Source: Chrysemys picta bellii
Taxonomy: Eukaryota
NCBI RefSeq assembly: GCF_011386835.1
Contig: NC_088801.1
Span: 55,986,001 to 56,050,000 of the forward strand
Length of the DNA stretch: 64,000 nt
Direction of reading: 5' to 3'
The position numbers and the translations under genes are program-made. Below are positions 1 to 60,066 of this stretch, in pieces. A model generated the notes under the pieces. That model saw only the letters and a list, made by a program, of their open reading frames with translations, did not search any database and was not told the origin of the DNA. The first letter of the stretch is position 1. Each line of letters starts with the position of its first letter.

Positions 1-79
1 CGGTCAACCGGGCCCGGCGACGGGGTGCACGGGGGCAACAAGGCGCGCGCACCCGAGCGGGGGTGGCTCCATTTCTCAC

Positions 80-107
80 CTTCGTGGGTCTTGGCGATCT
101 TCGCCAT
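80..107 (-). CDS. SF3B1: SF3B1 (splicing factor 3b subunit 1) first coding exon; gene continues off the left edge
   Basis: Minus strand reads AAAATGGCGAAGATCGCCAAGACCCACGAAG|GTGAGA = MAKIAKTHE plus a phase-1 GT donor. This matches the recalled SF3B1 N-terminus and the SF3B1-COQ10B-HSPD1-HSPE1 gene order. Confidence 0.95.
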
Positions 108-420
108 TTTGTGCAGCGCGAACAACACCGAGACGGAACTGGAGCTCCCAGTCCCCAGCCACTTCCGCTACGAGGGGCGGGGGGAGGGGAGACTCACTGC
201 GCAGGCGCAATGTACGTCAGCTAGCGACGGTCCGAGGCGACGGAGACTCACTGAGCAAGTGCGGTTGCGTCGACGGGGCGGGGGCAACAGTTGCGCAGGC
301 GCAGTGCTGGGCCTCACGGGCGTGAGAAAGCGCCAGGGGGAGTCTAAGGGGACGATTCTTTGTAGCGGGCACCCCCCACACGTTTGCCTGTTACCCTCAG
401 CGTGCTTGGCTTCGCTGTAG
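100..420 (-). promoter_or_regulatory. SF3B1 CpG-island promoter
   Basis: CpG-rich. YY1/TISU-like AAAATGGCG overlaps the ATG, an ETS core CACTTCCG lies at ~160, and two NRF1-like GCGCAGGCGCA motifs lie at ~198-208 and ~293-303. Confidence 0.8.
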
Positions 421-5620: not shown

Positions 5621-6480
5621 TGTAACAGGGTGAGCTATCCCCGTTACTGTCAGTGGGAACCTGGGGCCAACCCACCCTGTTCCAAGGCCTGGCCATTTAA
5701 GAACAGCTGCTCAGGAAGGAATAATGGAACCAAGCTGATAATGGGGGACACGTGCCAGTAGAATCACCACCTCCTGAGCATGATAAAGCACTGCTTTTTA
5801 GATAGAGGGGGAGCTGAGACTCAGGAGAGAACTGGAGGAAGGGGTGTCCTGGGGTAAAACAGAATGGGGAAGTGGGAGGAGCTTGCTAGAAATGAAGTTT
5901 CTGGAAGGAGGATTATGGTCCCCCTGCCTTGAGGGAGAAGTTTGAGACCAGGACTGGGGGTAAGGAAGAGAGCTGGGAGAGAATCCAGAGCGAGTAGAAC
6001 AGTGAGTGGAGACTTCAGAGTTTGGTGCTTTATAAAAGAGAAGCAGGGCCGCCAGGAAGGCTTGTAGTATAGGAAGAGGCCCTGGGTGAGAGAAGCAGAA
6101 TAGACTGTGGTTATTGGAGGGGTTTCCAGGCCTGGGACTCTATAGAAGAGGGTGGCCACAGGTTCCTCCTATATTGCTACCCTGTGATGATGTGTAGTGA
6201 CCCCTGTAGATAAGGAGAATATAGGACTGATTAGAGCCTGGGAGAGAAGTGCTGGAAATGAGGTGAAGATGAAGGAAAAGACAGTCCCTCAGGCAGGAAG
6301 AATCTTGCCTGCCAAGATGGGGGTGGAAGACTTGTTTGTATTTTGATACCTTGAAAGGGGTTGATTTTTGTGATTTAGCTGGAGGACTAAGTCACCAAAG
6401 CACCCAAACTGTGCTGAAGGCCCAGATGATCATCTCAGATGAGGGGAAACTGAAGCAGTGTTAGTGCATTGCCCTGTGAG
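5621..6480 (+). mobile_element. Probable solo LTR
   Basis: Starts TGTAACA, purine-rich body, TATAAAA at ~6030, degenerate TGTGA end near 6479. No TSD found. Confidence 0.45.
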
Positions 6481-6678
6481 GTGTTGTGCTCTGGGACTGC
6501 ATTCTACAACACTGCAGAACAGGTACAGCTGGAGGGTATGTGCTGTGACCCCAAGTGTATTAACTTGCAATAAATCCCCAAAGTTTGTTTTGAGGGAAGC
6601 CAATTGAATCTGAATGGAGAAAGAGATAGTTTAAGGCAAGGAGCCAAATCTATGTCTGCTTGCTCTTATGTTTTGTTG

Positions 6679-8137
6679 CAGAGTCATTGGCCATTATCTT
6701 TGAAAACACATGGCGATCGGAGGAGGTCCCGGATGACTGGAAAAAGGCTAATGTAGTGCCCACCTTTAAAAAAGGGAAGAAGGAGGATCCAGGGAACTAC
6801 ACGCCAGTCAGCTTCACCTCAGTCCCTGGAAAAATCTTGGAGTAGGTCCTCAAGGAATCAATTCTGATGCACTTAGAGGAGAGGAAAGTGATCAGGAACA
6901 GTCAGCATGGATTCACCAAGGGCAAGTCATGCCTGACTAACCTAATTGCCTTCTATGATGAAATAACTGGCTCTGTGGATGAGGGGAAAGCAGTGGACGT
7001 GTTATTCCTTGACTTTAGCAAAGCTTTTGATACGGTCTCCCACAGTATTCTTGCCGGCAAGTTAAAAAAATATGGGCTGGATGAATGGACTATAAGGTGG
7101 ATAGAAAGCTGGCTAGATCGTCGGGCTCAATGGGTAGTGATCAATGGCTCCATGTCTAGTTGGCAGCCGGTATCAAGCGGAGTGCCCCAAGGGTCGGTCC
7201 TGGGGCCAGTTTTGTTCAATATCTTCATTAATGATCTGGAGGATGGCGTGGTCTGCACCCTCAGCAAGTTTGCAGATGACACTAAACTGGGAGGAGTGGT
7301 AGATACGCTGGAGGGTAGGGATAGGATACACAAGGACCTAGACAAATTAGAGGATTGGGCCAAAAGAAACCTGATGGGGTTCAACAAGGACAAGTGCAGA
7401 GTCCTGCATTTAGGACAGAAGAATCCCATGCACTGTTACAGACTAGGGACCGAATGGCTAGGAAGCAGTTCTGCAGAAAAGGGGTTACAGTGGATGAGAA
7501 GCTGGATATGAGTCAACAGTGTGCCCTTGTTGCCAAGAAGGCTAACTGCATTTTGGGCTGTATAAGTAGGGGCATTGCCAGCAGATCGAGGGACGTGATC
7601 ATTCCCCTCTATTCGACATTGGTGACGCCTCATCTGGAGTACAGTGTCCAGTTTTGGACTCCACACTACAAGAAGGATGTGGAAAAATTGGAAAGAGTCC
7701 AGTGGAGGGCAACAAAATGATTAGGGGGCTGGAGCACATGACTTATGAGGAGAGGCTGAGGGAATTGGGATTGTTTAGTCTGCAGAAGAGAAGAATGAGA
7801 GAGGATTTGATAGCTGCTTTCAACTACCTGAAAGGGGGTTCCAAAGAGGATGGATCTAGACTGTTCTCAGTGGTAGCAGATGACAGAACGAGGAGTAATG
7901 GTCTCAAGTTGCAGTGGGGGAGGTTGGATATTAGGAAAAACTTTTTCACTAGGAGGGTGGTGAAGCACTGGAATGGGTTACCTAGGGAGGCGGTGGAATC
8001 TCCTTCCTTAGAGGTTTTTAAGGTCAGGCTTGACAAAGCCCTGGCTGGGATGATTTAGTTGGGGATTGGTCCTGTTTTGAGCAGGGGGTTGGACTAGATG
8101 ACCTCCTGAGGTCCCTTCCAACCCTGATATTCTATGA
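6679..8137 (+). mobile_element. CR1 LINE, 5'-truncated, frameshifted ORF2 reverse transcriptase
   Basis: ORFs 6660-6845, 6867-7511, 7355-7720 and 7654-8058 carry CR1 RT motifs ([36 protein letters not shown]). The CR1 3' end with ATTCTATGA tail is at ~8129-8137. Confidence 0.95.
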
Positions 8138-10099
8138 AGATGTACATGGTGCTTTATAAAAGATGGCAACAACTGCCCAAAACCAGGTTATAGAAATGCA
8201 AAGTCCTAATAACTTCTGGGGTATTAAATTGTGACTAAAACCAGGGGTGATGAGAGGGGAGGAAAGTGGGGACAATTGTACCTGAGCTCAGGGCCCCACT
8301 ACCAAAAGTCTGTAACTGGGGTGAAATAGGAAAGGGTGGGGCTTCAAGTTCTCTTTCAACAGGCCTGTCTAGAACTTACAGTTGTGGATCAAGACACCAC
8401 TGTTTGGTGCTGTACAAACATATAGCAGAGATAGTTCCTGTCCTGAAGAGCTCACAATCTGGACCAACAAGATTATTGGATGAAACAAACAAATTGGTCA
8501 GAGTGGGGGAAGGGAGAATAGGGTAACAGTGATGTAGAGCATATTTAGTGTAGGCTAGCTGCACACAGTATAGCAGCCTCTCCAGCCATTATCAGAATTG
8601 AATCTAAAGGAGGGTCTGGGGTGGCTTTAAAAACATTTTTGGGGTGTCTGTGCTAGGCATTTGGGTTGGTATGAGAGAAAACAAGTGTTTGAGGGAGAAG
8701 TGGACAAGTCAGTGAAGGCTTTTTGTTCTATGTCTTTAAAGGTGACTTGCCAAGGAAAAATGAGACTTATAATGGAGGTCCAAAAACTTAAAAACAAAAC
8801 TAGGCTTTTTTTTCTCTCTCTTTTTTTTTTAAGAAGTCTTTTTACAGGATGTGGATTGAGAGCTCTGTAAGGCCTCGCCTACACTACAAAGGGTTTGCTG
8901 GTATTTTTATACTGGCAACACCCCTCATGAAGATGCAGCTTATACAGGCAAGAGTTATTTTTTACTGATATGGCTTGCACCAGTTCCCCAAATGAAATTT
9001 TGCTGGTATAACTGTCTGCTGTAGGCTTTTTTCTGGTATGAAAATGTTGTAAAGAATCACACCTCCACCTGACATTATTATACCAGTAAAAGTTCATAGT
9101 GTAGATCTCATCTAAGACCCCACTCCTGTGATGTCTTAATCGTGTGCTTAACTCTTACACAATGTAAGTAGTTGCATTGACTTCAGTGGGAGTACTCAAA
9201 AGTGCACAAAATTAAATGTGTGCATAAATCTTTGCATGATCAGGCCTAAATCCTTAGTAATCTTTAACAGACATAAAATTTCTTGCATGAGAAATTATAA
9301 GATGTCTGAGTTTAAAAGATCTTCTCATAAAGAAATGAGCCTGAATAAAAAACTCTTCCAGCTGCAACTTCACTTCTATAGTGCCTCAATCTCATAATTA
9401 TCCAGTAATCTATAATTTTCAAGAAAAAACAGTCTAGTTACATCTAACTTCTAATATAAAAGTCAACCAGAAAAGCACATGTCTGAAATAAAAAACAACT
9501 CTTCAGGCCTCTTTTATATATTATAAAGAAGCATGACAGGAGACGAATCCATAAAGATAATGGCTGATATAATTTGCTTTCTCCTCCCTTGGATTCCTAG
9601 CAAATTGCAGAGAGTTGACAACCTAACTTTCTACATGCCCAAGTTGCTGTGTATGCCTTTTGGATGACAGAATCTCTATAATGTGCACAGATGTTGAAGA
9701 GTCCCTGACACGTTTTGAAATTCCACCTATTTTCTCCGGCAACCTTGTTGGATAAAATCGTTCCTTGCCTCGCATCCTGCAGTTGTGAAGCATGTTAGCT
9801 GATGCTCTCCTAATCAGAAGTAGCTGCATTTCACAGTTCCTTATTTATGCATGAAGGCCTTGAACCTACATCAGGATTTGTGAGCAGCACAGACTTCAGC
9901 TCTTGCATAGGACTCTATCTAGGCATAGGCAGTTGTGATAGTGGATACAGATACAGGATAAGGGCCACTATTTGTAAAACACCTTGATATCCTTTGTTGG
10001 GGGACAGGTTGCGTTAGAATACTGAGTGAGATTTTATATAAATATTTAACAAATGATTAATTGCATAATCAATAGATTCTAACTGTTCTTACCGTTATG

Positions 10100-10700
10100 A
10101 CATTGCAATTTTTCCCTCCTTCGCCCAGCAGGTGGCGCTGTAAAGGCACACGTTCTCCGTGCGCTGCTTCCTTCAAGCCTGCAGTGAGCGCCTTGGGGCG
10201 CCGGGCCCCTACCTCTTTGAACAACAGCCGATTGGGGGGCGTTGCTGTCGATCAGAGAGTCTGGGCGGACATCCAGCCCTGTTGGGACAACGGGCTGTCA
10301 GTCAGAAGAACCGGGCGCTGATTGGGCCCTGCCTCTACGGCTTGAGCGGTAGTTGCCCGGGCCAAGGCTTGAGCGGCGATGGGAAGGCGGCGTCCGGAAG
10401 CGTTGGTGCCCGGGGCGTGCTGCCTTTGTTTTACCGGCTCCCCCTGAGCCAGGGAGCCGAGCTCAGGGTCCGCTGCGTGTAAGAGGGGCCCAGGCGCGGC
10501 AGCGGTGGCGGGGAGGCGGCGGTGTGGGAAGGGCGCAGGCCCCCGGCCTGGCGGTGCGCGGGGGGCTCTTCCCGCGCCCAGAGCCTTGGGCGTGGGGCGG
10601 AAAGTGGCGCGCGGAGCCCGGGTGTGCGCGGGGTGAGCTCGCGGAGCCCGAGCTGGCGGGGGTGAGAGGGGGCCCCCAGAGAGAGACCGACTATGGACAG
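10100..10700 (+). promoter_or_regulatory. CpG-island promoter and candidate non-coding exon 1 (donor after 10478), most likely for the transposase-derived gene
   Basis: Isolated CpG island with two reverse CCAAT boxes (10231-10235, 10321-10325), an RFX X-box-like GTTGCCCGGGCCAA (~10352), an ETS CCGGAAG (~10394), then CGT|GTAAGA followed by a G-rich intron start. No other gene in the window accounts for it. Confidence 0.65.
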
Positions 10701-10876
10701 GAGCCAGGACAGGGATAACGCAGGAGAGGGATGATCTAGGTACGGAAATGGCTCCCTAGTGCCGGTCCCTGCCTCAGCCTTCAGAGTATTTATCTCACAT
10801 TTCCACAACACCTGCAGAGGCAGGGAAGGGCAGTTATTCCCATTGTACAGATGGCAAACTGAGGCATAGCGACAGA

Positions 10877-11128
10877 GGCTTCGTCTACACCTAAACATTA
10901 AATTGACCTAACTGCCTTGGTCAGGGCTGTGAAAAACTTCACGTCCTGTTGATGTAGTTAGGTTGATCTAACCCCCACTGTAGAAGCAGCTAGATCAAGG
11001 GACGAATTTTTCCTTTGATCTGTCATCTCCCTGAGAGGTGGATGAACTAAATTGATGGAAAAACCCTTCTGTTGATGTAGGATGTGTTTATGCTGCAGCA
11101 GTGCCACTGTATGATGGTCATACACTGA
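10877..11128. mobile_element. Non-autonomous TIR element (GGCT-CGTCTACAC end type) inserted into a CORE-SINE/MIR-like relic
   Basis: Starts GGCTTCGTCTACAC. MIR-like halves lie on either side (~10830-10876, ~11130-11210). Right end approximate. Confidence 0.4.
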
Positions 11129-11386
11129 CTTACGGTCACACAGGAAGCATCTGACAGAGTAAGAATTGGACTCCTGGTCTCCAAGTCCAAGAACCCTAGC
11201 CACTGAATCACTGTAGTGAAAGCATCTGTAGAACTATTAGCAGGAATTTCATGCCTCTGCCACCACTTCCTAAAAATATAAATAGATGCAATAATACTTC
11301 CAAAACTTACTGTGTATTTTCCATTGAATAGTTCATGTCTATCATAATTTTTCGTTTCACCTGAAAACTTTTCTAATATTCTTGAT

Positions 11387-11589
11387 CAGCGGTTCTCAAA
11401 CTTTTATACTGGGGGACCCCTTTCACAGAGCAAGTCTCTGAGTGCAGCACCCTCCCTTATAAATTAAAAACACTTTTTTATATTTAACACTATTATAAAT
11501 GCTGGAGGCTAAGTGAGGTTTAGGGTGGAGGCTGACAGCTCGTGACCCTCCATATAATAACCTCACGACCCCCAGTTTGAGAACCTCTG
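11387..11589. mobile_element. hAT MITE
   Basis: TIRs CAGCGGTTCTCAAAC / GTTTGAGAACCTCTG with a perfect 8-bp TSD TTCTTGAT. Confidence 0.9.
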
Positions 11590-12591
11590 TTCTTGATACA
11601 TTTAAATTACATCTGAAATGTAGAGATCTAGCTTTGCTTTCAAATTCTAGATGACCTTCCATCAGTTGAACATAATCCAACTCCATTGCTGTCTACTTTT
11701 GAGAGAGTTAATGTTCTCAGCTTCCTTTCTTAGCTTACAATTTCTTATGAAATTTTGCCAATGCTGTATGTATTTTCACAATTAAATACATGATAAAGCT
11801 AGTGAGGAGAGACTTCCTTCCATCTTTGCCCCACCAGAGGGGCTCAATGCCCTAACATCCCCATGTACATGCTAGTGAAGCTCACTTTCTATCATTGTCT
11901 TGTGACTAAAGCACAGGACTAGGAGAAAGGAAATCTGGGTTTAATTTCCAGCTCTGCCACCAATTTATATCACCTTGAAACAGAATGGTTAGTGACTTGG
12001 CCTATTTCCCTGCCTCACAGAATTGTTATATTGGCTTAACAGTTACGTGTAAAGCTTTCTTGGTTATTTAGATGGATGGCACTCTGAAAGTCGTCTTGTT
12101 TATAAAAAAAAAAAAAAAAGCTTTATTATTGCTTTGGCTGCCAATGGCGCATCCCATACAGTTGCACTATTCAGCTATCTATAGAACCAGTTGTAAATAC
12201 AGCATGTTAAAAATGCAATGGTTTTTAAACAGTAATTATCCACTATCACATATGGTCATCTCTGCAAGCTCCAATTAGGAACCACTCTTTGCCCACATAA
12301 AATGACTCTGAAAAGTGTTAGATATTGTAAAAGTATTTTTAACTTACAATTAGAAGGTTGAAATGAATCTGTTAACTTTCTAGTCAGTTTTTCCTCTATT
12401 GCAAATGTATGCTCTAATTTGGTATTATAGGATTGATTGTGCTGGTGGCTTCTCTTTTTTAAAAGGAAAACCAGGTTTAAATAATATCAAAAAAGCTCTC
12501 TGTTGGTCATTAGGACGGTGTGATATAAATGTTTTAATAAAAAAAAAAAAAAGCACCTTTAATGTGGAACTTCCCTACTGGAATAGATCAG

Positions 12592-12756
12592 TAGAGCCCT
12601 GCACAAATACAAAATTTGTATCCGCATCCCATCCGTGGATATAAAGCAGATATCTGCAGATTTGTAGGGCTCTAGATACAAAATTTATATTCACATCTGA
12701 TCTGCGATCTGCAAAAATGGTCTGGGAATATAAATCCACAGATTTGTAGGTCTCTG
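12592..12756. mobile_element. Small hAT-like MITE with a duplicated right end
   Basis: Left end TAGAGCCCTGCACAAAT; right ends ATTTGTAGGGCTCTA (to 12674) and ATTTGTAGGTCTCTG (to 12756). Outer flanks TAGATCAG / TGGATCAA match 6/8. Confidence 0.6.
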
Positions 12757-13865
12757 TGGATCAATCAGGCCAAGACCAAACCTGACAATGTTCAGAGTAC
12801 AAAGCAAAAAACACATATAATGGGTGAATAGGAGGGAATTAAAATAACTGCTAAAAGTAGCAGAGATGAAGTACAGGATCTTTTACAGACAAATTAATGT
12901 GTCTCAATATATATGGGGCTTAGATTCTACTCTTTTTAGGGATTTTTAATGTGACCATCACCTAGATATCAGAGTATATTTACATAAAGTAGACAGCGAG
13001 ACTGCATTTCCTGCTCTTTTCCCTTATAATGATGGGCATGTTAGAAATGTCTGACATAGATGGAAAAATATTTTACAGCTTGTTTTATGATTGTTTCTAA
13101 TTGTTGATTCTTGAGATATGTTGCTGAGAGTTAGGTTGGGTTTTTATTTTTTGGTAGATCTTGATATCTTCTGGTAATGAACAGAGGGAGTGTTGCTGAT
13201 TTCAAAATTTTTCTATGGAGTTGAGTAAGCATTCTACAACAACCGTGATAGAGACACTCCCAGGACACCAAGAGAAATACGGAGAGAAGAGAAAATACTT
13301 GGTGGTCAAGAGGAATACTTGTGAATAAAGAAAAGGTTGGTACCAGAAGAGAAGGAACAGCAGAAAGAAGCTCCTGCTCTGTAAATAACTAAATAAATCA
13401 AGTCTGACGCTCTGAAGGCTTAAAATACTCACCCTTTATTTTTTCTTCCGGTCTTCTATGTATTTTATGTTTCATTGGAGTATTTTTACTGTGTTGAAAT
13501 GTTGTTTCTTTGCACAGATTTCTTGAAACTTTGTTTTATTTATTTAAAAAAGAAAAGAAAATGATGTTGCTGGATTTCGTTTTTTGAATATCCCAGGAAA
13601 CTTTTCTTGGGAGCTGGAAATTAAAAATCAAAGATGTTTACCAACTTCTTTTTTAGATTGATGCAGAAAATAGGATTCTAACCAAGGACATATTGGGATT
13701 TTAACTGAATTTAGTGCTCATGAAAGATGGCCATTGACATCCTTGAAGATGTATTCACAAAAAAAGTACATAGGGATGTTTTTGCCTTCATTACCGGCTG
13801 TCGCTGGGCCTATGCCTTAGTCTTCAGGATCAGTTTTGGGGTGAGAGTGACGTTTAGTCACTGCG

Positions 13866-15334
13866 AGCCAGATCCACAAAACGATTTAGATGCTTAAGGC
13901 CAACGTTTAAGCACCACTGAGATCCTCAAAATCCCTGCTCACCTGCTGCCTCACCAAGTCCCTAGGTGCTTAAATTTCCCTTGGTAAAGTCCCCTGGTTT
14001 TTGCCAGTGAGCACATGCACAGCCACCTCAGTCTAGGTGTCTGGGCACCTGAGCCCTGGGCAGCGTCCTCAAACTAAGTGTTCCTCTGCTTATCTTGCCT
14101 GTAGAGCCTGATCCATAACGTGTTCCTACACAAAAGAGGAGGTGATGGTGGTGCTGCCCCCTTACAATGTTTAGCCCCGTGGTTAGAGCACTCACCCAGA
14201 ATGTAAAAGACCCAGGTTCAATTCTCCCTGAGGTGGAGAAAGGAATTGAATGTGTCTTCCTTTACTTTGTGATTTCCTTAACCACTGGCCCAAGGGGTAT
14301 TCTGGGACATGTAACTCTCTTTCTCTCCTGTTGAAACTGTTCCACTTTTATAAATAATCAAATATGCTGGACTGGAACCTCGGTGTCTCACATCCCAGGT
14401 GAGTGCCAAAGCGACTAACAGCTATAGATCATTCTCACTCTCTTTCTGTTCAACTGCATATTTAATTACTTATATACAGTGGAACAGCTTCCACAGGATA
14501 AATTGAGAGGGGCTCATATCAGATTATGCCATAGCCAGTGATTAGGGTACTCTCATGGGAGACCCAAGTTCAAATCCTTTCTCCACATCAGGCAGAGGGG
14601 GAATTGAACCTGGGTCATCTATATCCTGAGTGAATGGTCTAATCTAGGGGTAGGCAACCTATGGCACGTGTGCCGCCTTTGGCACGCGAGCTGATTTTCA
14701 GTGGCACTCACACTGCCCGGGTCCTGGCCACTGGTCTGGGGGGCTCTGCATTTTAATTTAATTTTAAATGAAGCTTCTTAAACATTTAAAAAACCTTATT
14801 TACTTTACATACAACAATAATTTAGTTATATATTATAGACTTATAGAAATAGATCTTCTAAAAACATTAAAATGTATTACTGGCACGCGAAACCTTAAAT
14901 TAGAGTGAATAAATGAAGACTCAGCACACCCGTTCTGAAAGTTGCCGACCCCTGGTCTAGTCACTGAGTTAAAAATTATTAGGGGAGGTTCTACCACCTT
15001 CTCTGTGGCATGTCTTCAAAAAACAAAACAGCGTAGATACCTACCGTAATTCCAGAAAAGAGTTTTTGGCTAAGAATCCTTAGTGGAGATAGACAGTCTA
15101 GCTTGGACTTGGATACCTAAGTGCCTTTGAGTGGTGGTACCTCTCCTCAGCATTTCCTATTGGCTAATTTAGGTTGGTTCCTACTCACTATTCTGGCTTT
15201 TGTAATCCCATTGTTAGATGTCCAGCTCTTCCCATGTATTGTATAAGGAGCCTACATGCCTGAGCAAGGCTGTGGGTTGCAAGGTACTTAAAAGTTAGGC
15301 ACTGAAATGCCCAAGCTCTTTTGTGGTTCTAGCC
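13866..15334. mobile_element. TIR-bounded element containing several tRNA-like A/B-box modules, with a nested hAT MITE
   Basis: Ends AGCCAGATCCACAAAA and TTTTGTGGTTCTAGCC are inverted. Internal modules include GTGGTTAGAGCACT...GGTTCAATTC in alternating orientation. Confidence 0.6.
14645..14954. mobile_element. hAT MITE (CAGGGGTCGGCAAC family), short form
   Basis: Ends TAGGGGTAGGCAACCT / AAGTTGCCGACCCCTG; TSD GTCTAATC / GTCTAGTC (7/8). Confidence 0.88.
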
Positions 15335-15495
15335 ATGTGACTGATTCTGTCTTTGGCCTCTCTACTAAGACTGCACCAAGTGTAATAGTTGCAGTGATGG
15401 AACTTGTGATGTAGGCAGCTTTGGACTGAAACCATCAACTAATTTCATAGATCACTAAGCAGCTATCAGGCAGCAATGATTTCCAGTCACCAAGT

Positions 15496-15566
15496 GCCAG
15501 ACTTTTAAAGGTATTTAGGTGCCTACGTGTATCTTTAGACATCTAAATACCTTTAAAAATCTGACC
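15496..15566. repeat. ~70-bp palindromic mini-element
   Basis: GCCAGACTTTTAAAGGTATTTAGGTGCC pairs with GACATCTAAATACCTTTAAAAATCTGACC. A related sequence lies at ~1513-1610. Confidence 0.6.
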
Positions 15567-16662
15567 CCAACCAACTTGGAGTTGATTAGAACCAGTGTCC
15601 TCAAGAGTTACAGACCCTTACTAGTCACGTGAGCAGTCTATTCTCCTTTTGCTTTGATATTATAGTTTGTATAATACGACCTGTGGACACTTTTTCCCTT
15701 TAATGCACGGTATGCACTTTTGGGGAAGAGTGGGGATTAATATCTTTTATATGGAGAGTATTTTGGTGATATATTGGGTAATATAAGATTGTAAGATGTT
15801 GTTAAGCTAGACAGTGATTTTTACTTACGTACAGCTTTCCATCCAAAGATCTCAAAACACTTTAAAAACATTAATTAAGACTCAGAACATCTGCATAGTA
15901 GAAAAGTATTGTCCCTATAAATGGATAAACAAAAACACAGAGTTGAGGTTAAAATTTTTAAAATGGTGTTTCTACTCTTAGGCACTTAAATCTCTAATTA
16001 GGCACAAATTCACAAATGGGCTGACCTTCAGAAATGTTGATAATCTTCAAATTCCCCTAAAGTCTGTGAGAGCTTGAGGGCCTCAACACCTTTGAAAATC
16101 AGTCCATTTTTATTTTGGTGCCTAATTAGAGATTTAAGTGAGTTGCCGAAGGTCACAAGAAGTCTGGACAGAGCTGGGAATAGAACCCAGAATTCCTAAG
16201 CCCAGTCTTGGGCATTAGGCACAAGACATTTATTAGTAAAATAGCTTGAGGGAACATGTTAATTATGTCCTATATAACTTTTTTCCCATTTGGGAAGAAG
16301 AAAGCATCCTGGAGTTGTAAAATTTGCTGCCTACCAGTTTTGTTAAAGTAACTCTGAACTTTTTGAACTAGCAGCCCATATTCAGATGAAATTTTAACAG
16401 GTTTGAATATTTGGACCCTGAGTTATACTTTCATATAGAAATTTTTGTTAAGGTTTAGCAAGCCTTTTCCTTTTGAAGAGTTTGAACTGGTTGTCAGAAT
16501 TTATTGGTGAAATCCTTTTCTTTTCTTTTTTTTTTTTAATCCTCCAATAAGGGATTTCAGATTTTTCATGTTACTTTTATCTTGGGAGATTTATAGTAAT
16601 TGACTATTTTTATTTTTAAGGAATCTTATGTTCTTGGGGAAGCCCATAACACATGACCAGAG

Positions 16663-18690
16663 ATGGCACCTAAACCACTTGGGAAGTGGGAAAAGTATGG
16701 AAAAAGATACTGTCGAGATTGGGAAAGGGAAACTGGATTAAAAGAATGGATTCGAAGTGTACCAGGAGATGACACAAAGGCAGCATGCAAATATTGCGCA
16801 TGTGAAATCAGAGCCCATCATAGTGATTTGGTTGCACACAGTAAAACCAAAAAGCACAAGAGACATGTTGCTTTATTTTCATGTTCTTCTGATATGAAAA
16901 AACATTCATTTGAATTTGAAGTTGAAAACCAAAATTCATTTGACGATGATATCACGCAAGCCAAAATGGATCAATCTGTTAATGTGTGTGCACTGAAGCT
17001 AGCGGCACACATAGCTTGCCATATGAGCATTTTTACAGTGGATCACCTAGGCTGCATTGTTGGAGGGATAGCAGAGAAGGACATTAGTCTGCATAGAACA
17101 AAATGCTCCACACTGATTAGAAATGTCATTGGTCCTACTGTACACGAAGAACTTCTGAGAGACATTGGCAATGGACACTACTCGTTGATCATTGATGAAA
17201 GTACAGATGTATCAGCACAAAGGCAACTTTGCTTGATAGTAAGATATTTTAGCAACAAGCTTAAATGTATTGTATCATCCTTTGCAGGGATCATTAACTT
17301 GACTAGAAGTGGTACTATCACAGAAGCCCTCTTGACATTTCTAAATGACAACAAGCTGAACATAAAAAAGTGTGTTGGGATTGCTGCTGATGGTTTCAAT
17401 ACAAGCTTATGTGGAAATAAAAATTCATTGCTCAAAAAGTTTTATGAACTCAATCCTTGTGGAGTTTTCATCAAATATGTAAGTTACTCTCTCTATTTGT
17501 GCTCTTCAAAAGCCATTGATGTGCTTCCATTGAACATAGAGTATATGGTTTCACGGACATACTTGTGGTTTTCCCATAGCACTTTCCACCAGAAGAGGTA
17601 CCATGAACTATATGCTGCCATCAGTGTTGGAGAGAATTTCCTGAAAATACTGCAGCTTACTGAGACAAGATGGCTGTCCATTAGCCCTTGTATTAACAGA
17701 GTACTTGATCAGTATGAAACTCTGATGTTGCACTTTCAGTCTATAAGAGACAATGAAAGGGACTACAGTGCTGAGCTTCTCTATCAAATGTATTCTGATC
17801 CAGTAAATAGACTCTATCTTGTTTTTCTGCAGCCTCTTATTCAGGAAGCTAATAGGATCAACAAGTTATTTCAATTTGAAACAGTTAATCCAGTTAACCT
17901 TATTGCTGAATTAATGCTGTTCTATCAGAATTTGGTGCAAAGAGTCATGAAACCTTGTGTCTTTACAACATGGTCATCCATTGTAAATTATGACATTCAC
18001 TGTAACAGGAACTACATGCCTCTTTCGGAGGTTAACTTTGGATCAGCGTTCTTGTCTGAATTAATAAATGCAAATCTTTCCTCACATACAGTAGAGACCA
18101 TCCAAAGCAGATGTCGAGATTGTATCCTTGAGTTTGCTAAGCAAATAAAGCTCCGACTGCCTCCAAATGTCCATCATCTAGAATCTCTCAGTGCTCTGAG
18201 CCCTTCAGTTGTTCTAAGTCCTACAAAACCTGAATTCTCAACCCTGTCTTTTTTGTCCTTATGTAGAGGGGATCATATCAAGTTGAAACAGCAATGGAAA
18301 AATCTGGATGCTGTCTCATGGACAAACACAGAAGATAGCCAAATAGAACAGTTCTGGATAGAAGTTGCAAAACACACAGATGAAGTTGGTGATAAGGATT
18401 TTGTTGAGCTAGGATTATTTGCCCTTGCCCTTCTCACCTTGCCCTTCAGCACTGCAGCTGTGGAGTGTACAATCTCACAAATGAACTTGATAAAAACCAA
18501 GTTAAAGAACAGACTGCAGGACAGCCTACTTGAAAATATCTTAAGGATTAGGGCCTATATGCACCGAAATAAGATTTGCTGCAACCAGTTTCAACCATCC
18601 AAAGAGATGATATCTTTGTTTAATAATGAGTTTTATGCAATTGCTAATAGCAAGGACACTACAGATGACTCTGAGGAGGATATCTTTTGA
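16663..18690 (+). CDS. hAT-superfamily transposase-derived protein, 675 aa (C2H2/BED-like finger, RNase H-like DDE core, C-terminal hATC dimerisation region); probably domesticated
   Basis: Single stop-free ORF. Motifs: C42-x2-C45...H59-x5-H65 finger, IID178ESTD, AD243G, TR336W337, PFSTAAVE601, KNRL. Polypyrimidine-AG acceptor ends at 16620. Kozak context GAGATGG; an in-frame TGA at 16654-16656 fixes the start. Confidence 0.9.
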   Translation: MAPKPLGKWEKYGKRYCRDWERETGLKEWIRSVPGDDTKAACKYCACEIRAHHSDLVAHSKTKKHKRHVALFSCSSDMKKHSFEFEVENQNSFDDDITQAKMDQSVNVCALKLAAHIACHMSIFTVDHLGCIVGGIAEKDISLHRTKCSTLIRNVIGPTVHEELLRDIGNGHYSLIIDESTDVSAQRQLCLIVRYFSNKLKCIVSSFAGIINLTRSGTITEALLTFLNDNKLNIKKCVGIAADGFNTSLCGNKNSLLKKFYELNPCGVFIKYVSYSLYLCSSKAIDVLPLNIEYMVSRTYLWFSHSTFHQKRYHELYAAISVGENFLKILQLTETRWLSISPCINRVLDQYETLMLHFQSIRDNERDYSAELLYQMYSDPVNRLYLVFLQPLIQEANRINKLFQFETVNPVNLIAELMLFYQNLVQRVMKPCVFTTWSSIVNYDIHCNRNYMPLSEVNFGSAFLSELINANLSSHTVETIQSRCRDCILEFAKQIKLRLPPNVHHLESLSALSPSVVLSPTKPEFSTLSFLSLCRGDHIKLKQQWKNLDAVSWTNTEDSQIEQFWIEVAKHTDEVGDKDFVELGLFALALLTLPFSTAAVECTISQMNLIKTKLKNRLQDSLLENILRIRAYMHRNKICCNQFQPSKEMISLFNNEFYAIANSKDTTDDSEEDIF

Positions 18691-18932
18691 AAAGACTCAA
18701 GTGAAGAGGATCTCTTTTAAAAAAGTAAGCAAGGATTTTCAAAATGGCTCATTGCAATTGAACTATTTGACTCATGCATTTCAAATTTTGTTCTATCTAC
18801 AAATCTGTTTTCCCATTCCTTTAGTAAGAACTACTTTTCATAGAGGAAGATACATTGCATAAAGCCACACAACCCTTTTTAGAAAAGGATTTTTGAAAAA
18901 CTAAAGTAAAATTAATGAGGCATGCTCTGGTA

Positions 18933-19595
18933 CAGGGGTCGGCAACCTACGGCACGTGTGCCAAACACCGCATGCCGATTTTGAGTGGCACGCTGCTGCC
19001 TGCCACGGTCCCAGCCCCACTCAGCCCCCCCGTCCACCGCTCTCCCCTGTGGGGGCGGAGGCAGAAGCTTGGTTCTCCGGCAGCCAAGCTTCCCTCTTCT
19101 CCCAGTGTGGTGTTTTCCTGCCCCTCCTCCTCCCTCTCCCTGCCGCCGATCAGCTGATGGCCCTTGCGAGGGGGAGGAGTGGCAGCGTGCTCCCTGCTCC
19201 GTCGAGGAAGTAGAGAAGAGGTAGGGTCGGGACCTTGGGGAAGGGGACAGGGCCTATCCCTTCCAGCCCCCTGCCATGAGCTGTTCAGGGCAGGGGGCTG
19301 GGAGCACCCCAGCCCTCTGCCCTGACCCCCCCCCTTCTGCCCTGCACCCCCCCCACACTCCCGAGCTGAGCAGGCTGGCAGCATAAGATCAGCATTTTAA
19401 TTTAATTTTAAATGAAGCTTCTTAAACATTTTGAAACCCTCTTTACTTTACATACAACAATAGTTTAGTTATATAATATAGACTTAGAGAGACCTTCTAA
19501 AAAACGTTAAAATGTATTACCGGCACGTGAAACCTTAAATTAAAGTGAATAAACGAAGACTTGGCTCACCACTTCTGAAAGGCTGCCTACCCCTG
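18933..19595. mobile_element. hAT MITE (CAGGGGTCGGCAAC family), long GC-rich form
   Basis: Ends CAGGGGTCGGCAACCT / AGGCTGCCTACCCCTG; TSD CTCTGGTA / CTCTAATA (6/8). Shares both end regions with 14645-14954. Confidence 0.88.
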
Positions 19596-22199: not shown

Positions 22200-22630
22200 G
22201 GGGAGGGGGAGCTGGAGATAAGGGGCACGACCTGAGAGGTGGGGAAGCTGGTGACAAGGGAGACGCATTGGAGGGAGCTATAGGGCAGTGAGGGGTGGGT
22301 GGAGCACGAGACAAGGGGAGGGGGCTATAGGGCAGGATCTGAGGCGGGGTAGGGGGAGCTGGGGACGAGGGAAAGGGGCTCTAGGGAGGATCTGAAGGGT
22401 GGGGGCTACAGGGCAGGATCTGAGGGGTGGGGCCGGGAGCTGGAGACCAAGGGCAAGCCGGGGTGTGGGCTGAGGCGCGGGGAAACGAGACCAGGCCCGG
22501 CAGAGTCTGAGGGGAGGCTTGGAGACGAGGCAGGGTCTAGGCGGTGGGGGGAGCTGGAAGGCGGGAACGGAACGGAAGGCTGGTGGGGGGAATTGCCCCG
22601 CGCGCTGATGCGCGGGAGCTGGAGGTACAC
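22200..22630. repeat. Degenerate G-rich tandem array upstream of COQ10B
   Basis: Recurrent GGGGAGCTGG(A/G)GAC and AGGGCAGGATCTGAGG units. Confidence 0.6.
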
Positions 22631-22679
22631 GCCGCAATACCGTGTCTTGCTCCTCGCGACCCCAGGCTGTGTAACTTTA

Positions 22680-23046
22680 AGGGCTACTGAGTGTCACGCC
22701 ATTCGGCCAATCAACGGGCTGATTCCAGCACTCATCCCGCCCCTGTTGCGCCCATCCTTATGTAACCCCGACAAAGCGAGCCCTAAGCCTTGTGACTGCG
22801 CGCGGTCCCGTAGCTCTGTCTCGCGCTCGCGCACCAGAGTCATGGGGTGGGTGTGGGAGAGGGTGTGTCGAGGGTAGGACACCGCGGATCACATAGCAGT
22901 GACGTGTGGGACTTTGGACACGGTGATTGGCGGCGTCTGGGCGGCTGCTGCGCGGTGATTGGCTTGCTAGAGATGGGGGCGGGTCTGGCGCTGGCAGCCG
23001 TTAGGTTGACTGACTGGGATGGGGAGGTGAGGCAGCGGGGCCGAAC
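22680..23046 (+). promoter_or_regulatory. COQ10B CpG-island promoter and 5' UTR
   Basis: CCAAT at ~22708, two GTGATTGG boxes (~22923, ~22955), GTGACGTG at ~22899, high CpG density. Confidence 0.75.
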
Positions 23047-23120
23047 ATGGCGCGGAGCGGCCGGGCGCTTGGGAAAGTGCTCGCCGAAAGGCTCACGGCG
23101 CCGCACAGAAGCGTTCTCAG
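23047..23120 (+). CDS. COQ10B: COQ10B exon 1 (Arg-rich presequence-like)
   Basis: [24 protein letters not shown], then AG|GTAGGT. Confidence 0.8.
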
Positions 23121-26100
23121 GTAGGTGGGGTCCTCGCGTCCGGCCAGTCACAGGGACATGGGCAGGTTTAAAGGGGCTGGTGACCCCCCCCCCCCCCCGT
23201 TCTTTCCCGTACTGCGAGCGCCTCCTCCCACCGCCTAGGCACTGGGAATCTCCCTTGAGCCGCTCCTCCAGCTCGTGAGAGGCGGCCCCTGCTCGCTCCA
23301 CCCGGCGCCCGGGAGCTGAGTGGTGGTAACTAACAACGTTGACATTCGCCTTGCGATCAGTAGGCTCCAGAGTGAACGCGCTGGCGCTGGGCGGGGAAAC
23401 TGCTCGCTCCTCTCGGAGCCCCCGTCTGGCTGAGGATTTGGGCACTTGGGGTCGTGGGGCTCAAGTCTCTTTCCAACTCAAAGGCAATAAATAGGTAGCT
23501 AGGTACATTCTCTGGGGAAACCCCAACATCACGCTGGAGTTAAGGGGATAATTTAAGGGTGAAATACTGTCACAGGAGTATTGTGATGATTCCAAAAAAC
23601 TTTAGTGCAGATGAAAGGTCTGGTTCTGCTTGAAGGAACTGCAGAACATTAACAGTCTACAAACTGACACACTCTCTAGCTGAACCAATATATATAATTT
23701 TCGGGCACATTTCAAACATATTTCAAGACCTATGTCATGACATTTTAATAAATGTAAGGTTGATTAAGAGTCAAGACCTACCCACTTTGTGTCACAACCG
23801 GTTCTGTTGAACCCAGTCTTTCAATTATAGAGGCAGGTTGTGTGAAAACAAAAGAAAACTTGGAAAGCAAAATGGTCTCAAACTATTTCTCTTAATAAGG
23901 AGTGAAATAATAAAAGGGCTCTTCCAGTCTTTATTGTTATTAGGGAGCTGCTGGTTGTGCCTCCATGTTAAGGTTGAGGTACGGTGTGTGTGTGGTTCCC
24001 CTTTTCCCCGTATTTAAAACTGGTAATAAATAGGCTGGAAGTGAAATCCCTTCATGATGTCATAAACTACATTCAGTTGTTTGACACGGACTGAAGTAGC
24101 AAAATGTGGGATCTTTTTTTTCCCCCTCTTTGGAGGGGAAAAAAATGTAATTTTATGTCCTGTCCCTATTCAAGTGAAGTTTAAGGTGGGCTGGAGATAC
24201 TAAAATAGTTCATCCTTGTTAAATGAAAGTAGCTTTTTAAAATGATTTAATGTGTGTGGTTTGAGGACAAACAACATTCCCAGAAACCGTGTCTAACACA
24301 GAAAAGCCTGTTATTTAGACTCTTGATACCTAGTAACATTTGGTACCTAGTAACATTTGAATATGGTTATAGCCTATCTTAAAGAAACACGTTGTTTAGG
24401 TGCTTTTGATCCAAGTGTAACTTGTCTTAAAATGATAGTGTGTTCAGGACTTTCTGCATTGAAAGTGAGATAAAGAATTAGGGGAGGGTAGCTATTACTA
24501 GGGTTTTTATAAGCACTATGTTCATGATCTACCAAATACTTAGCTATAGATTCAATCTGTACCAAACTTGTATATAAACTTATCTTTAACAACTTGTATA
24601 ATGCATGCACCAAATACATACCTCTATCTATTAATGTTTTAATCAATAACGTGCTATTAATAAAAGAGGGAGAGACATTCAGACCACTTTTCCATAAAGC
24701 ACTTTTTTTCCTTTGTCACCTAGTGCAGAGAGGAGCACTGTGGAAAGCTGCACAATTATGTGAAAAGGAAAGATGTCCATGTGGTATCTTAACACCACGC
24801 AGCTGCTTACAACCTTCTAATGTGTGAGCTTTGTTCTGCCTGTGTGTTGAGTACCAAACTAACTAATGAGGGAGAAATTGATGTCCACTGGGATTTGGAA
24901 TGAGATCAACTTATGTCACATTGATGTCAAAGACCATAAAACAGCCACCAGTTGACATTAACTTGATGAAACTGATATTTGAGAAACTATGAATACGGTT
25001 ACACTGGCACATCCTTAGTACTAATCTCAGTCTTTTTTATCATTTGTTAGATATCTCTTCTTCTAGTACTTGATTCTAATCAACTTTAATCTTAAAACAG
25101 ATCTGTGTTTTTTTTTTTTTTTTGTAATTTAATAAAATCATGGAGTCTGTTATTTGAACATGTAAGATACAGTAGTAACTGTTTACTCCGTGGAGCATGA
25201 AAGCCCTGTGGTACCATAGTTGGTGTCCTAGCATTTGGAGATATCCAATCCAATCATTTGCTGCTTTAATAGTAAAAAAGTATACTAAGATGTGAAAGCT
25301 GGCTGCCCTGTTGCTAGAGAGGGGTGAATGCAGGACTAGAAGCCAAGTACTTCTGAATTCTAATATGGGCGCTGCTGCTATCTGCCCTCTGTGACCTTGA
25401 ACAAATCACTAATATGCTACATCTGTTTCCCTAACTGCAAAATTGGGAATGTTTAGTGTTTGAAGATGGATGAACAATGAGTGTTGAGCACTGTTTTTTA
25501 TATACCTAGACTAAATACTTTGCTACTTACTACATGTGACCTTGAAAGAGTTAAAAGTCTGATTCAAGAAAGCACCTATACTTAAGTCCCACTGGTATTA
25601 CAGTATTTAAGTGATGTCTTCTGTAAGGATGCTTTCCTGTATCTTAGCTGAAGACAGCACATTCTTGATATCTGATTTATCTTCAGATAAAATAAAGAGA
25701 AAATAAACTGATGATGCAGTATTCCATATGAAACTTCCCCAGACTTGTTAACCTTGTAATTTCTTCTTATGTTAATCATGCCTGCCTTGAATGGTATTAA
25801 AACTCTAAACCAGACATTAGCTATCAGCAGTTATTTCTCATTGTTCTTATTTATGTTATTTAACATAAAGGATTGGGATTTGGAAGTTGCAAACCAAGTC
25901 TACCGGAAAAATGGTTTGAAATATTTTTACTGATCATTACAGAAATTTAAATACACATTTATTTTTGACAATGTATCACATACATAGTTAAAAACTCTCA
26001 TGTTTTATTTTTGTCTTTGGTTGAGAGAGGCTAACTTAAATGTAAAATAAGGCCTATCCCAAGTTTTCTGAGTGCATTGACCAGGTTTATAGAAATTTGA

Positions 26101-42513: not shown

Positions 42514-60066
<17,553 letters not shown>

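What the first reader, a model, noticed from the sequence alone, without database searches (positions are those of the whole stretch)
16621..18720. Candidate domesticated hAT-transposase gene inserted between SF3B1 and COQ10B
Seen: a 2028-nt ORF with no stop or frameshift, whereas every LINE ORF in the window is broken. It has a strong acceptor 42 nt before the ATG, good Kozak context, and no TIRs or TSD around it. Known: hAT transposases have repeatedly been domesticated as single-coding-exon genes with non-coding upstream exons (the ZBED family, ZNF862, GTF2IRD2, EPM2AIP1-type genes). As I recall, human SF3B1 and COQ10B have no protein-coding gene between them. Inference: this is a lineage-restricted host gene, probably a DNA-binding or chromatin protein, in a conserved housekeeping block.
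Basis: partly seen in the sequence, partly recalled or inferred. Interest (0 to 1): 0.88.

Follow-up and report, generated by a model that had tools for sequence, protein, structure and literature searches.

The report
Reptile gene born from a hAT transposase
The intact 675-codon reading frame is a real, single-copy host gene derived from a hAT "jumping gene"; it has sat between SF3B1 and COQ10B under strong purifying selection since before turtles and lizards split, and nobody appears to have described it.

Summary
Observation confirmed. The ORF is at 16663..18690 (+) and encodes 675 aa. An AG acceptor ends at 16620, 42 nt before the ATG. No TIRs or TSD flank it.

- The protein has a Hermes-like hAT transposase fold of the Buster/DUF4371 branch.
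- It is single-copy in every turtle listed.
- Lizards of five families carry it. In the three fetched lizard loci and two further turtle loci it lies SF3B1(-) / ORF(+) / COQ10B(+).
- Turtle-lizard DNA similarity begins and ends exactly at the ORF.
- dN/dS is 0.10-0.15 pairwise and 0.16 by maximum likelihood (2ΔlnL 540 against neutrality).
- The reptile proteins form one clade that follows the species tree. Its nearest relative is an active fish transposon with TIRs and 8-bp TSDs.
- D178, D243, E601 and R336-W337 are kept.
- Turtles replaced the active-site CxCH with YVSY. Those codons now form a consensus splice donor, used by an annotated truncated isoform.
- The gene appears to have its own CpG-island promoter (10101-10900), a non-coding first exon and an intron of about 6.1 kb.

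No orthologue was found in birds, crocodilians, snakes, iguanians, geckos or mammals. Read laying failed, so expression evidence is indirect.

RefSeq predicts the gene as an uncharacterised LOC, or misnames it "COQ10B isoform X1". No paper was found. Earlier scan notes concern this same stretch only, not other DNA.

Verdict: a new member of a known kind (domesticated transposase).

The parts
75..125 (-). SF3B1 exon 1 (left neighbour, divergent orientation)
   Evidence: 94-95% identical blastn match to the 5' end of the SF3b1-domain gene called in Elgaria L002 and Podarcis L003. A CpG island covers 1-600.
10101..10900 (+). The gene's own CpG island, the putative promoter
   Evidence: GC 0.65 with 61 CpG, separate from the SF3B1 and COQ10B islands. 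An equivalent middle island exists in Dermochelys L004 9701-10500, Mauremys L005 2001-3900, Elgaria L002 7501-8200 and Podarcis L003 6501-7100.
10390..10478 (+). Putative non-coding exon 1. The start is approximate; the donor GT is at 10479-10480.
   Evidence: The Dermochelys gene model starts 5989 nt upstream of its ATG, which maps to about window 10390. The N-terminus MGRRRPEALVPG of the Lepidochelys isoform P0072 is encoded at 10379-10414. The donor GCGT|GTAAGAG is invariant in three turtles. Not confirmed by reads.
10479..16620 (+). Intron 1 (about 6.1 kb)
   Evidence: Inferred from the two splice sites. Of the 20 small runs that hold the whole ORF, only X5 appears among holders of 15000-16600, with a share of 0.26.
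16603..16620 (+). T-rich tract and AG splice acceptor
   Evidence: The sequence ends in TTTTTATTTTTAAG, followed by G at 16621. A pyrimidine tract plus AG lies about 40-48 nt upstream of the ATG in Rhineura, Elgaria and Podarcis, although the flank is otherwise unalignable.
16621..16662 (+). 5' leader of the coding exon, with a 6-codon uORF (16653-16673) overlapping the main ATG
   Evidence: Read from the sequence. The uORF is present in all three turtles aligned, and not in Rhineura or Podarcis.
16663..18690 (+). Coding sequence, 675 aa, of a hAT (Buster/DUF4371-type) transposase-derived protein
16786..16857 (+). N-terminal zinc finger (C42, C45, H59, H65; C-x2-C-x13-H-x5-H)
   Evidence: H59 and H65 are invariant and C42 and C45 are at least 90% conserved in 22 family members. 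The model gives strands then a helix with pLDDT 85-89. dN/dS for residues 1-72 is 0.08. Pfam zf-BED is not matched.
17194..17196 (+). Catalytic D178 (equivalent to Hermes D180)
   Evidence: Invariant in 55 sequences. Profile alignment to Hermes.
17389..17391 (+). Catalytic D243 (equivalent to Hermes D248)
17476..17487 (+). Y-V-S-Y, the turtle replacement of the active-site C-x-C-H motif; the codons TAT GTA AGT TAC contain a consensus 5' splice site
   Evidence: Identical codons in the window, Dermochelys and Mauremys. Lizards and the fish transposon keep C-x-C-H.
17479..18266 (+). Alternative internal intron (788 nt, frameshifting) that gives the annotated 295-aa isoform
   Evidence: Splicing 17478 to 18267 reproduces the length and the out-of-frame tail (two residues differ in this species) of the 295-aa isoform annotated in Chelonia, Malaclemys and Trachemys. 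No reads were laid.
17668..17673 (+). R336-W337 (equivalent to Hermes R318-W319)
   Evidence: W337 is invariant and R336 at least 90% conserved. Aligned to Hermes PTRW.
18463..18465 (+). Catalytic E601 (equivalent to Hermes E572). The family motif ERxFS is ECTIS here.
23038..23123 (+). COQ10B exon 1 (right neighbour, same strand)
   Evidence: blastn match to the start of the Polyketide_cyc gene in L001-L003. A CpG island covers 22301-23600.

Best explanation
This is a domesticated transposase gene. A Buster/DUF4371-type hAT transposon inserted between SF3B1 and COQ10B in or before the common ancestor of turtles and lepidosaurs. It lost its terminal repeats and has been kept ever since as a single-copy host gene.

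Shown: single copy, conserved position, loss of transposon ends, strong purifying selection over the whole protein, and a Hermes-like fold with the DDE and RW residues kept.

Inferred, gene structure: the gene is transcribed from its own CpG-island promoter (about 10.1-10.9 kb) through a short non-coding exon and an intron of about 6.1 kb into one coding exon.

Inferred, function: the protein most likely works as a sequence-specific DNA-binding, oligomerising regulator. It would bind DNA through the N-terminal C2H2/BED-like finger and the helical domain at residues 104-170, and self-associate through the hAT C-terminal region.

In turtles it should not be able to make hairpin-capped double-strand breaks, because the active-site CxxH motif is gone. 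At most it could nick DNA.
For: - Family and fold. DUF4371 and Dimer_Tnp_hAT hits are weak for this protein, but DUF4371 is present in 22 of 22 family members and Dimer_Tnp_hAT in 17 of 22. A family profile hits Hermes at E 1e-9 and aligns D178/D243/RW336-337/E601 to Hermes D180/D248/RW318-319/E572. The AF2 model has pLDDT 81.5 and its top Foldseek PDB hits are all Hermes.
- Single copy. Each listed turtle species carries the protein on one chromosome-scale contig, or on a few assemblies for some species, and the listed full-length forms are all 675 aa. No other turtle paralogue appeared in either search.
- Synteny. The order SF3B1(-) / ORF(+) / COQ10B(+) holds in Elgaria, Podarcis and Dermochelys. 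ORF / COQ10B holds in Rhineura and Mauremys.
- Conservation limited to the ORF. Turtle-lizard blastn similarity (76-78%) starts at 16662 and stops at 18693-18695.
- Selection. Pairwise dN/dS is 0.10-0.15 within turtles, within lizards and between them. ML omega is 0.16, with 2ΔlnL = 540 against omega = 1. By region, dN/dS is 0.03-0.09 in the finger, the helical domain and both RNase H halves.
- Single origin. The ten reptile proteins form one clade (SH-aLRT 100) whose branching follows the species tree.
- Transposon relatives. The nearest outgroup in Pseudorasbora is a 2.9-kb element present at three loci. Copies are 99.6-99.8% identical, with TIRs and perfect 8-bp TSDs. The window has no TIR or TSD.
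- Gene structure.
- Expression. Twenty runs of only 54-224 M letters from 7 studies hold 100% of the ORF words. Of these, only X5 is among the holders of the 1.6 kb just upstream, with a share of 0.26.
- CxxH loss and its meaning. PMC4763223 reports that Kat1 C402A/H405A nicks but cannot form hairpins, and that Hermes H268 mutants are severely defective.
Against: - No reads could be laid. Transcription, exon 1 and both splice junctions therefore rest on RefSeq models in other turtles and on word shares in runs whose RNA status is only guessed.
- The whole catalytic triad and RW are retained, and the RNase H core is as constrained as the DNA-binding parts. That would also fit a protein that still needs catalysis.
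- No DNA-binding or oligomerisation test was done.
- Pfam zf-BED does not match.
- Absence from archosaurs, snakes, iguanians and geckos is inferred from protein databases only. Pseudogenes or unannotated copies would be missed.
Confidence: 0.85

Rival explanations
1. It is a domesticated gene whose selected function is still catalytic: a site-specific nuclease or recombinase, as in Kat1, RAG1 or PGBD5. This would apply at least in lizards, which keep DDE, CxCH and RW. Turtles would retain a nicking or altered activity.
For: - D178, D243, E601 and R336-W337 are invariant in all reptile orthologues. Lizards also keep CxCH.
- The two RNase H halves have dN/dS 0.05-0.09, as low as the zinc finger.
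- Domesticated hATs with retained catalysis exist, for example Kat1 (PMC4763223).
Against: - Turtles lost CxCH yet keep the gene under equally strong constraint (dN/dS about 0.12 within turtles). The conserved function therefore does not need hairpin formation.
- All reptiles changed other positions conserved in mobile copies: ERxFS became ECTIS/ECTVS (EGTVS in Elgaria), HSLQL became HSLYL-type, ATDG became AADG and PRN became PLN.
- The precomputed Pfam lists show PF05699 for many mobile relatives but for none of the reptile proteins.
Confidence: 0.2
2. It is not a separate gene but an alternative 5' part or isoform of COQ10B, as RefSeq names it in Chelonia mydas, Rhineura floridana and Podarcis lilfordi.
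For: The names 'COQ10B isoform X1/X2' are attached to P0003, P0017, P0073 and P0085. The ORF lies 4.3 kb upstream of COQ10B exon 1 on the same strand, so read-through or shared transcripts are plausible.
Against: - The proteins so named are transposase from first to last residue, with no Polyketide_cyc segment.
- Most species' annotations give it its own LOC number.
- COQ10B has its own CpG island at 22301-23600 and the ORF has another at 10101-10900.
Confidence: 0.08
3. It is a transposon copy that is still mobile, or a neutral relic that merely happens to be intact.
For: The DDE triad is intact. Young hAT elements (hAT-6_XT) do exist in this genome (PMC11008031).
Against: - Single copy, no TIR or TSD, and the same position in turtles and lizards.
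- The flanks are unalignable while the ORF is 76-78% identical at the DNA level, and omega is 0.16.
- The chance of 675 open codons is about 3e-12 for the whole window.
- No turtle protein related to this ORF other than its orthologues was found, so hAT-6_XT belongs to another hAT branch.
Confidence: 0.01

Closest known systems
Mammalian Buster/DUF4371-type domesticated hAT genes (ZNF862, FAM200A/B/C, ZBED5, ZMYM1/6, ZBED9/SCAND3, KIAA1586, GTF2IRD2, EPM2AIP1, C17orf113)
   Same: Same branch of hAT transposases and same overall fold (Foldseek E 1e-14 to 5e-21). Same style of gene: single copy, TIR-less, and a whole transposase retained. The single coding exon behind a non-coding 5' exon is stated from general knowledge for several of them.
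   Different: Only 11-18% identical in the structural alignment, so it is not an orthologue of any of them. It sits at a different locus (SF3B1-COQ10B). It is restricted to turtles and some lizards, carries no added host domain (no SCAN, MYM, KRAB or GTF2I), and keeps the full DDE and RW.
The Pseudorasbora parva hAT element (loci L006-L008), with related teleost copies (P0015, P0020)
   Same: Closest sequence relatives (54-59% aa identity) and sister to the reptile clade. Same domain order and a single-exon ORF of similar length.
   Different: The fish element is mobile. It is present at three or more loci that are 99.6-99.8% identical, with 14-bp TIRs beginning CAG and perfect 8-bp TSDs. It keeps CxCH, ERTFS and HSIQL. 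The reptile gene has none of the transposon ends and has changed those motifs.
Hermes transposase (Musca domestica; PDB 2BW3, 4D1Q, 8EDG)
   Same: Best solved structural match. The catalytic D, D, E and RW residues align.
   Different: 12-14% identity. Hermes belongs to the Ac-like branch, has a recognisable BED domain and is an active transposase.
Kat1 of Kluyveromyces lactis (a domesticated hAT that makes hairpin-capped breaks for mating-type switching)
   Same: A domesticated hAT that retained the catalytic residues. It gives the experimental reading of the CxxH motif (PMC4763223).
   Different: Kat1 needs CxxH for its function, and turtles have lost it. There is no evidence here of a programmed DNA rearrangement.

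Membership tests
hAT superfamily transposase (Buster / DUF4371 branch) | RNase H-like catalytic core interrupted by an all-alpha insertion domain (Hermes fold) | tested here: met
   AF2 model with pLDDT 81.5 and pTM 0.73. The twelve best Foldseek PDB hits are all Hermes, E 1e-9 to 3e-7, probability 1.00.
hAT superfamily transposase (Buster / DUF4371 branch) | DDE catalytic triad and the R-W pair | tested here: met
   D178, D243 and W337 are invariant in 55 sequences; E601 and R336 are at least 90% conserved. They align to Hermes D180, D248, E572 and R318-W319.
hAT superfamily transposase (Buster / DUF4371 branch) | C/DxxH motif after the second D | tested here: not met
   The window and all turtles have K-Y-V-S-Y-S. 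Lizard orthologues and transposon copies have K-C-x-C-H-S. The motif is met in lizards and lost in turtles.
hAT superfamily transposase (Buster / DUF4371 branch) | Pfam DUF4371 (PF14291) and the hAT C-terminal dimerisation domain (PF05699) | tested here: inconclusive
   For this protein, DUF4371 scores 22.3 bits (cut-off 32.1) and Dimer_Tnp_hAT 16.2 bits (cut-off 21.4). Across the family, DUF4371 matches 22 of 22 members and Dimer_Tnp_hAT 17 of 22. Precomputed PF14291 and PF27073 hits exist on most full-length orthologues. The family profile matches the Hermes C-terminal region at E 1e-9.
hAT superfamily transposase (Buster / DUF4371 branch) | N-terminal BED-type zinc finger | tested here: inconclusive
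   A C-x2-C-x13-H-x5-H pattern is conserved and modelled as strands plus a helix. Pfam zf-BED matches only 1 of 22 family members, weakly, and not this protein.
Mobile hAT element | Terminal inverted repeats and 8-bp target-site duplication; multiple copies | tested here: not met
   No TIR or TSD around the ORF. One copy per genome. The fish relative meets all three criteria.
Domesticated (exapted) transposase gene | Single-copy orthologues at a conserved genomic position across distant species | tested here: met
   SF3B1 / ORF / COQ10B in the window and five fetched loci: Dermochelys and Mauremys (turtles) and Elgaria, Rhineura and Podarcis (three lizard families). Full-length single-copy orthologues also exist in further turtles and lizards.
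Domesticated (exapted) transposase gene | Purifying selection on the coding sequence | tested here: met
   Pairwise dN/dS 0.10-0.15. ML omega 0.16, with 2ΔlnL 540 against omega = 1.
Domesticated (exapted) transposase gene | Expression as a host transcript | tested here: inconclusive
   Twenty small runs hold 100% of the ORF words, and only one of them appears, at 0.26, among holders of the upstream 1.6 kb. RefSeq models carry an upstream exon and spliced isoforms.
ZBED / FAM200 / ZNF862 and related mammalian gene families (orthology) | Orthologous relationship: high identity and a shared locus | tested here: not met
   11-18% identity to every reviewed mammalian domesticate. No mammalian protein appears among the sequence hits.
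Host-transposase fusion gene (transposase capture) | A transposase domain spliced in frame to host-gene exons | tested here: not met
   The full-length proteins are transposase throughout, including those named 'COQ10B isoform X1'.

The most novel reading that the evidence does not exclude
Lizards would keep a fully equipped recombinase (DDE, CxCH and RW) that still cuts DNA at specific genomic sites.

Turtles would have converted the same gene into a non-hairpinning DNA binder. They rewrote the four CxCH codons into a consensus splice donor, so the locus now also makes a truncated isoform (finger plus half core) that could regulate the full-length protein.

That would be a domesticated transposase caught in two functional states in two reptile lineages.
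Probability: 0.15. Interest if true: 0.8.

Novelty: new member of a known kind. Interest (0 to 1): 0.58.

Why it matters
- Domesticated transposases have given vertebrates V(D)J recombination and many transcription factors. Nearly all studied cases are mammalian or pan-vertebrate.
- This would be an old gene, dating to about the turtle-lepidosaur split (roughly 250-280 My from general knowledge, not computed here). It is reptile-restricted, very well conserved, retains the whole catalytic triad, and seems to have been lost repeatedly: archosaurs, snakes, iguanians and geckos have no hit.
- It offers a natural experiment on what a transposase core is kept for. One lineage has the complete active site and the other lacks CxxH, yet both are under equally strong constraint.
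- It also corrects a database mislabel ('COQ10B isoform X1').

Tried and rejected
There is therefore no junction, strand or depth evidence.
- Single-sequence PDB search found nothing. Only the family profile reached Hermes.
- zf-BED HMM gave no match for this protein.
- TIR search. Inverted repeats around the ORF are chance or other repeats. The fish TIR pattern occurs no more often than in shuffles and not near the ORF.
- Second search with a reptile-only profile found no orthologue in any further lineage.
- Possible link to the published turtle hAT-6_XT horizontal transfers (PMC11008031; scan note s1-318379) was rejected. That element is multi-copy with TIRs and TSDs, and no turtle protein related to this ORF other than its orthologues was found.
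- Literature. No paper holds COQ10B, SF3B1 and transposase together. The transposase-capture survey mentions neither COQ10B nor turtles.
- The donor implied by the Lepidochelys isoform P0072 (after CCCG at about 10410) has no GT in this window, although it does in Dermochelys. I therefore prefer the invariant donor at 10479.
- Complex prediction for homodimerisation was not run. Two full chains exceed the size limit, and the result would not have changed the verdict.
Full report
**Observation.** The window carries one ORF far longer than any other: 16663..18690 on the + strand, 675 aa. The next longest is 290 aa. With a stop-codon frequency of 0.055, the chance of 675 open codons is about 2e-17 per start and about 3e-12 for the whole window. 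A T-rich tract and AG end at 16620, 42 nt before an ATG with G at -3 and +4. The three reverse-transcriptase ORFs in the window are fragments of 214-290 aa. SF3B1 exon 1 lies at about 75-125 (-) and COQ10B exon 1 at about 23038-23123 (+).

**What the protein is.**
- Pfam gives sub-threshold hits to DUF4371 and the hAT C-terminal dimerisation domain. Across 22 relatives, DUF4371 matches all 22 and Dimer_Tnp_hAT 17.
- A profile of 55 relatives finds Hermes transposase at E 1e-9. It aligns D178, D243, R336-W337 and E601 with Hermes D180, D248, R318-W319 and E572.
- An AlphaFold model (pLDDT 81.5, pTM 0.73) has Hermes as its twelve best solved matches.
- Among reviewed proteins, the best matches are the mammalian Buster-type domesticates: ZNF862, FAM200A/B/C, ZMYM6, ZBED5, SCAND3, KIAA1586 and others. 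They share only 11-18% identity.
- It is therefore a Buster/DUF4371-branch hAT transposase and not an orthologue of any named mammalian gene.

**Host gene, not transposon.**
- The protein belongs to a 90%-identity cluster of 23 turtle sequences. The listed full-length members are 675 aa. Each species carries it on one chromosome-scale contig, or on a few assemblies for some species. The cluster includes sea turtles, Macrochelys, tortoises, geoemydids and emydids.
- The window differs from Malaclemys at one residue, so the genome is an emydid.
- Full-length relatives at 74-77% identity occur in Elgaria, Rhineura, Podarcis and Zootoca, and full-length in Hemicordylus. Varanus has a partial protein.
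- In Elgaria, Podarcis and Dermochelys the neighbours are SF3B1 (-) upstream and COQ10B (+) downstream. In Rhineura and Mauremys, COQ10B is seen downstream.
- In blastn of the lizard loci against the window, similarity (76-78%) starts at 16662 and ends at 18693-18695. The only other matches that correspond in position are the first exons of the two neighbours; a few short stray matches fall elsewhere.
- No inverted repeats flank the ORF.

**Selection.**
- Nei-Gojobori dN/dS is 0.10-0.15 for all 15 pairs among the six reptile sequences: within turtles, within lizards and between them.
- A codon model gives omega 0.16. Fixing omega at 1 costs 270 log-likelihood units.
- By region, constraint is strongest in the helical domain 104-170 (0.03), the C-terminal RNase H/hAT region (0.065), the zinc finger (0.08) and the N-terminal RNase H half (0.09).
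- It is weaker in the insertion domain (0.14-0.18) and absent in the linker 73-103 (about 0.9).

**Origin.**
- In a tree of 56 relatives, the ten reptile proteins are one clade (SH-aLRT 100). Inside it, turtles and lizards separate, Elgaria pairs with Varanus, and Rhineura pairs with the lacertids, as in the species tree. The stem is 0.39 substitutions per site.
- The nearest outgroups are teleost copies.
- The Pseudorasbora copy is a textbook mobile hAT. It sits at three loci that are 99.6-99.8% identical over 2.7-2.9 kb. At the two full-length loci the 14-bp TIRs are identical at 12 of 14 positions and begin with CAG, flanked by perfect 8-bp target-site duplications.
- Other relatives form multi-member clusters of full and broken copies.
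- The pattern is one immobilised descendant of a widespread transposon family. It was fixed before the turtle-lepidosaur divergence, roughly 250-280 My ago (a date from general knowledge, not computed here).
- Two protein searches found no orthologue in birds, crocodilians, tuatara, snakes, iguanians, geckos, amphibians or mammals. This points to losses but cannot exclude unannotated or decayed copies.

**Gene structure.**
- Turtles have three separate CpG islands: the SF3B1 promoter, a middle island (window 10101-10900) and the COQ10B promoter. Elgaria and Podarcis have a matching middle island 2-3.5 kb upstream of their ORFs.
- The Dermochelys gene model begins 5989 nt upstream of its ATG, which maps to about window 10390.
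- A Lepidochelys isoform begins with a peptide encoded at 10379-10414.
- A consensus donor (GT at 10479-10480) is invariant in three turtles.
- A pyrimidine tract plus AG lies 40-48 nt before the ATG in all six species, although turtle and lizard flanks do not otherwise align.
- An old Podarcis muralis isoform reads in frame from an upstream exon through the leader.
- The likely structure is a non-coding exon 1, an intron of about 6.1 kb, and one coding exon.

**Expression.**
- Indirectly, 20 runs of only 54-224 million letters, from seven studies, hold all sampled words of 16621-18720. That is not plausible for shallow genomic DNA of a single-copy locus.
- The best holders of the 1.6 kb just upstream are genome-sized runs. 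Of the 20 small runs, only X5 appears there, with a share of 0.26.
- This fits an expressed exon that begins near 16621, but it is not proof.

**Active site.**
- The DDE and RW residues are kept in every reptile.
- Several residues that are constant in mobile copies changed in all reptiles: ATDG to AADG, PRN to PLN, HSLQL to HSLYL-type, and ERxFS to ECTIS/ECTVS (EGTVS in Elgaria).
- Turtles alone replaced K-C-x-C-H-S by K-Y-V-S-Y-S, with identical codons TAT GTA AGT TAC in the window, Dermochelys and Mauremys.
- In Hermes, H268 of this motif is in the active site. In the domesticated Kat1, C402A/H405A still nicks DNA but cannot form hairpins (PMC4763223).
- The turtle protein is therefore predicted to be unable to make hairpin-capped breaks, yet it remains under dN/dS of about 0.12. 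The selected function in turtles does not require them.

**Internal splice donor.**
- The new turtle codons create a consensus donor (TAT|GTAAGT).
- Splicing 17478 to 18267 (acceptor TTATGTAG) reproduces the length and the out-of-frame tail of the 295-aa isoform annotated in Chelonia, Malaclemys and Trachemys; two tail residues differ in this species.
- Sea turtles have a further in-frame donor, made by a K236R codon change, that yields a 376-aa isoform.

**Verdict.**
This is a domesticated hAT transposase gene lying between SF3B1 and COQ10B.
- I favour a DNA-binding, oligomerising regulator. A retained nuclease role, especially in lizards, is a serious rival.
- RefSeq already predicts the gene, as an uncharacterised LOC or under the misleading name 'COQ10B isoform X1'. 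I found no paper on it.
- It is a new member of a known kind. It is of moderate interest because of its age, its patchy retention and the lineage-specific remodelling of the active site.

Noticed in passing
window 3677-10020: About 6.3 kb is present here but absent from the aligned Dermochelys interval. It contains a reverse-transcriptase fragment ORF (6867-7511, RVT_1 E 1e-27) and a strongly G-skewed block (6001-8000, GC skew 0.275). It is probably a LINE insertion between the SF3B1 promoter and the transposase gene's CpG island.
   Followed up: partly
window 14645-14952 and 18929-19593: Two stretches are absent from both Dermochelys and Mauremys. They flank the coding exon and end or begin with complementary sequence (CCGACCCCTG and CAGGGGTCGGCAACC, inverted pair I4). 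They look like two lineage-specific insertions of one repeat family in opposite orientation, not TIRs of the gene.
   Followed up: partly
window 16653-16673: A six-codon upstream ORF (ATG ACC AGA GAT GGC ACC TAA) overlaps the main start codon. It is present in all three turtles aligned and absent in Rhineura and Podarcis.
   Followed up: no
L006:9413-12316, L007:5407-8316, L008 from about 5403: A recently active autonomous hAT transposon in Pseudorasbora parva. It is about 2.9 kb, with copies 99.6-99.8% identical. The two full-length copies have 14-bp TIRs starting with CAG and 8-bp TSDs CTGACAAT and CCCACCAG. The L008 copy is truncated at its right end near 8089. RefSeq calls its product 'FAM200A-like'.
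   Followed up: yes
database records P0003, P0017, P0073, P0085: RefSeq names pure transposase-derived proteins 'coenzyme Q-binding protein COQ10 homolog B, mitochondrial isoform X1/X2' in Chelonia mydas, Rhineura floridana and Podarcis lilfordi. None contains COQ10B sequence. The gene models probably merge two adjacent same-strand genes.
   Followed up: partly
window 15000-16600: A few small RNA-type runs (X39 and X40 at 0.51; X41, X42 and X5 at 0.26-0.31) hold part of the intron just upstream of the coding exon. This could be intron retention, an alternative exon, or words from the MITE-like palindromes at 15498-15563 and 15983-16140.
   Followed up: no
window 60001-62800: A GC-rich block (GC 0.50-0.55) carries ORFs of 190-233 aa on both strands that have no Pfam match. 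It is possibly another CpG-island promoter region further along the gene row.
   Followed up: no
same genome, another piece (scan note s1-322496): The scan lists another candidate domesticated hAT/Buster gene next to CNPY3 in this genome. Neither protein search returned a turtle paralogue of the present protein, so it must be a distant relative.
   Followed up: no
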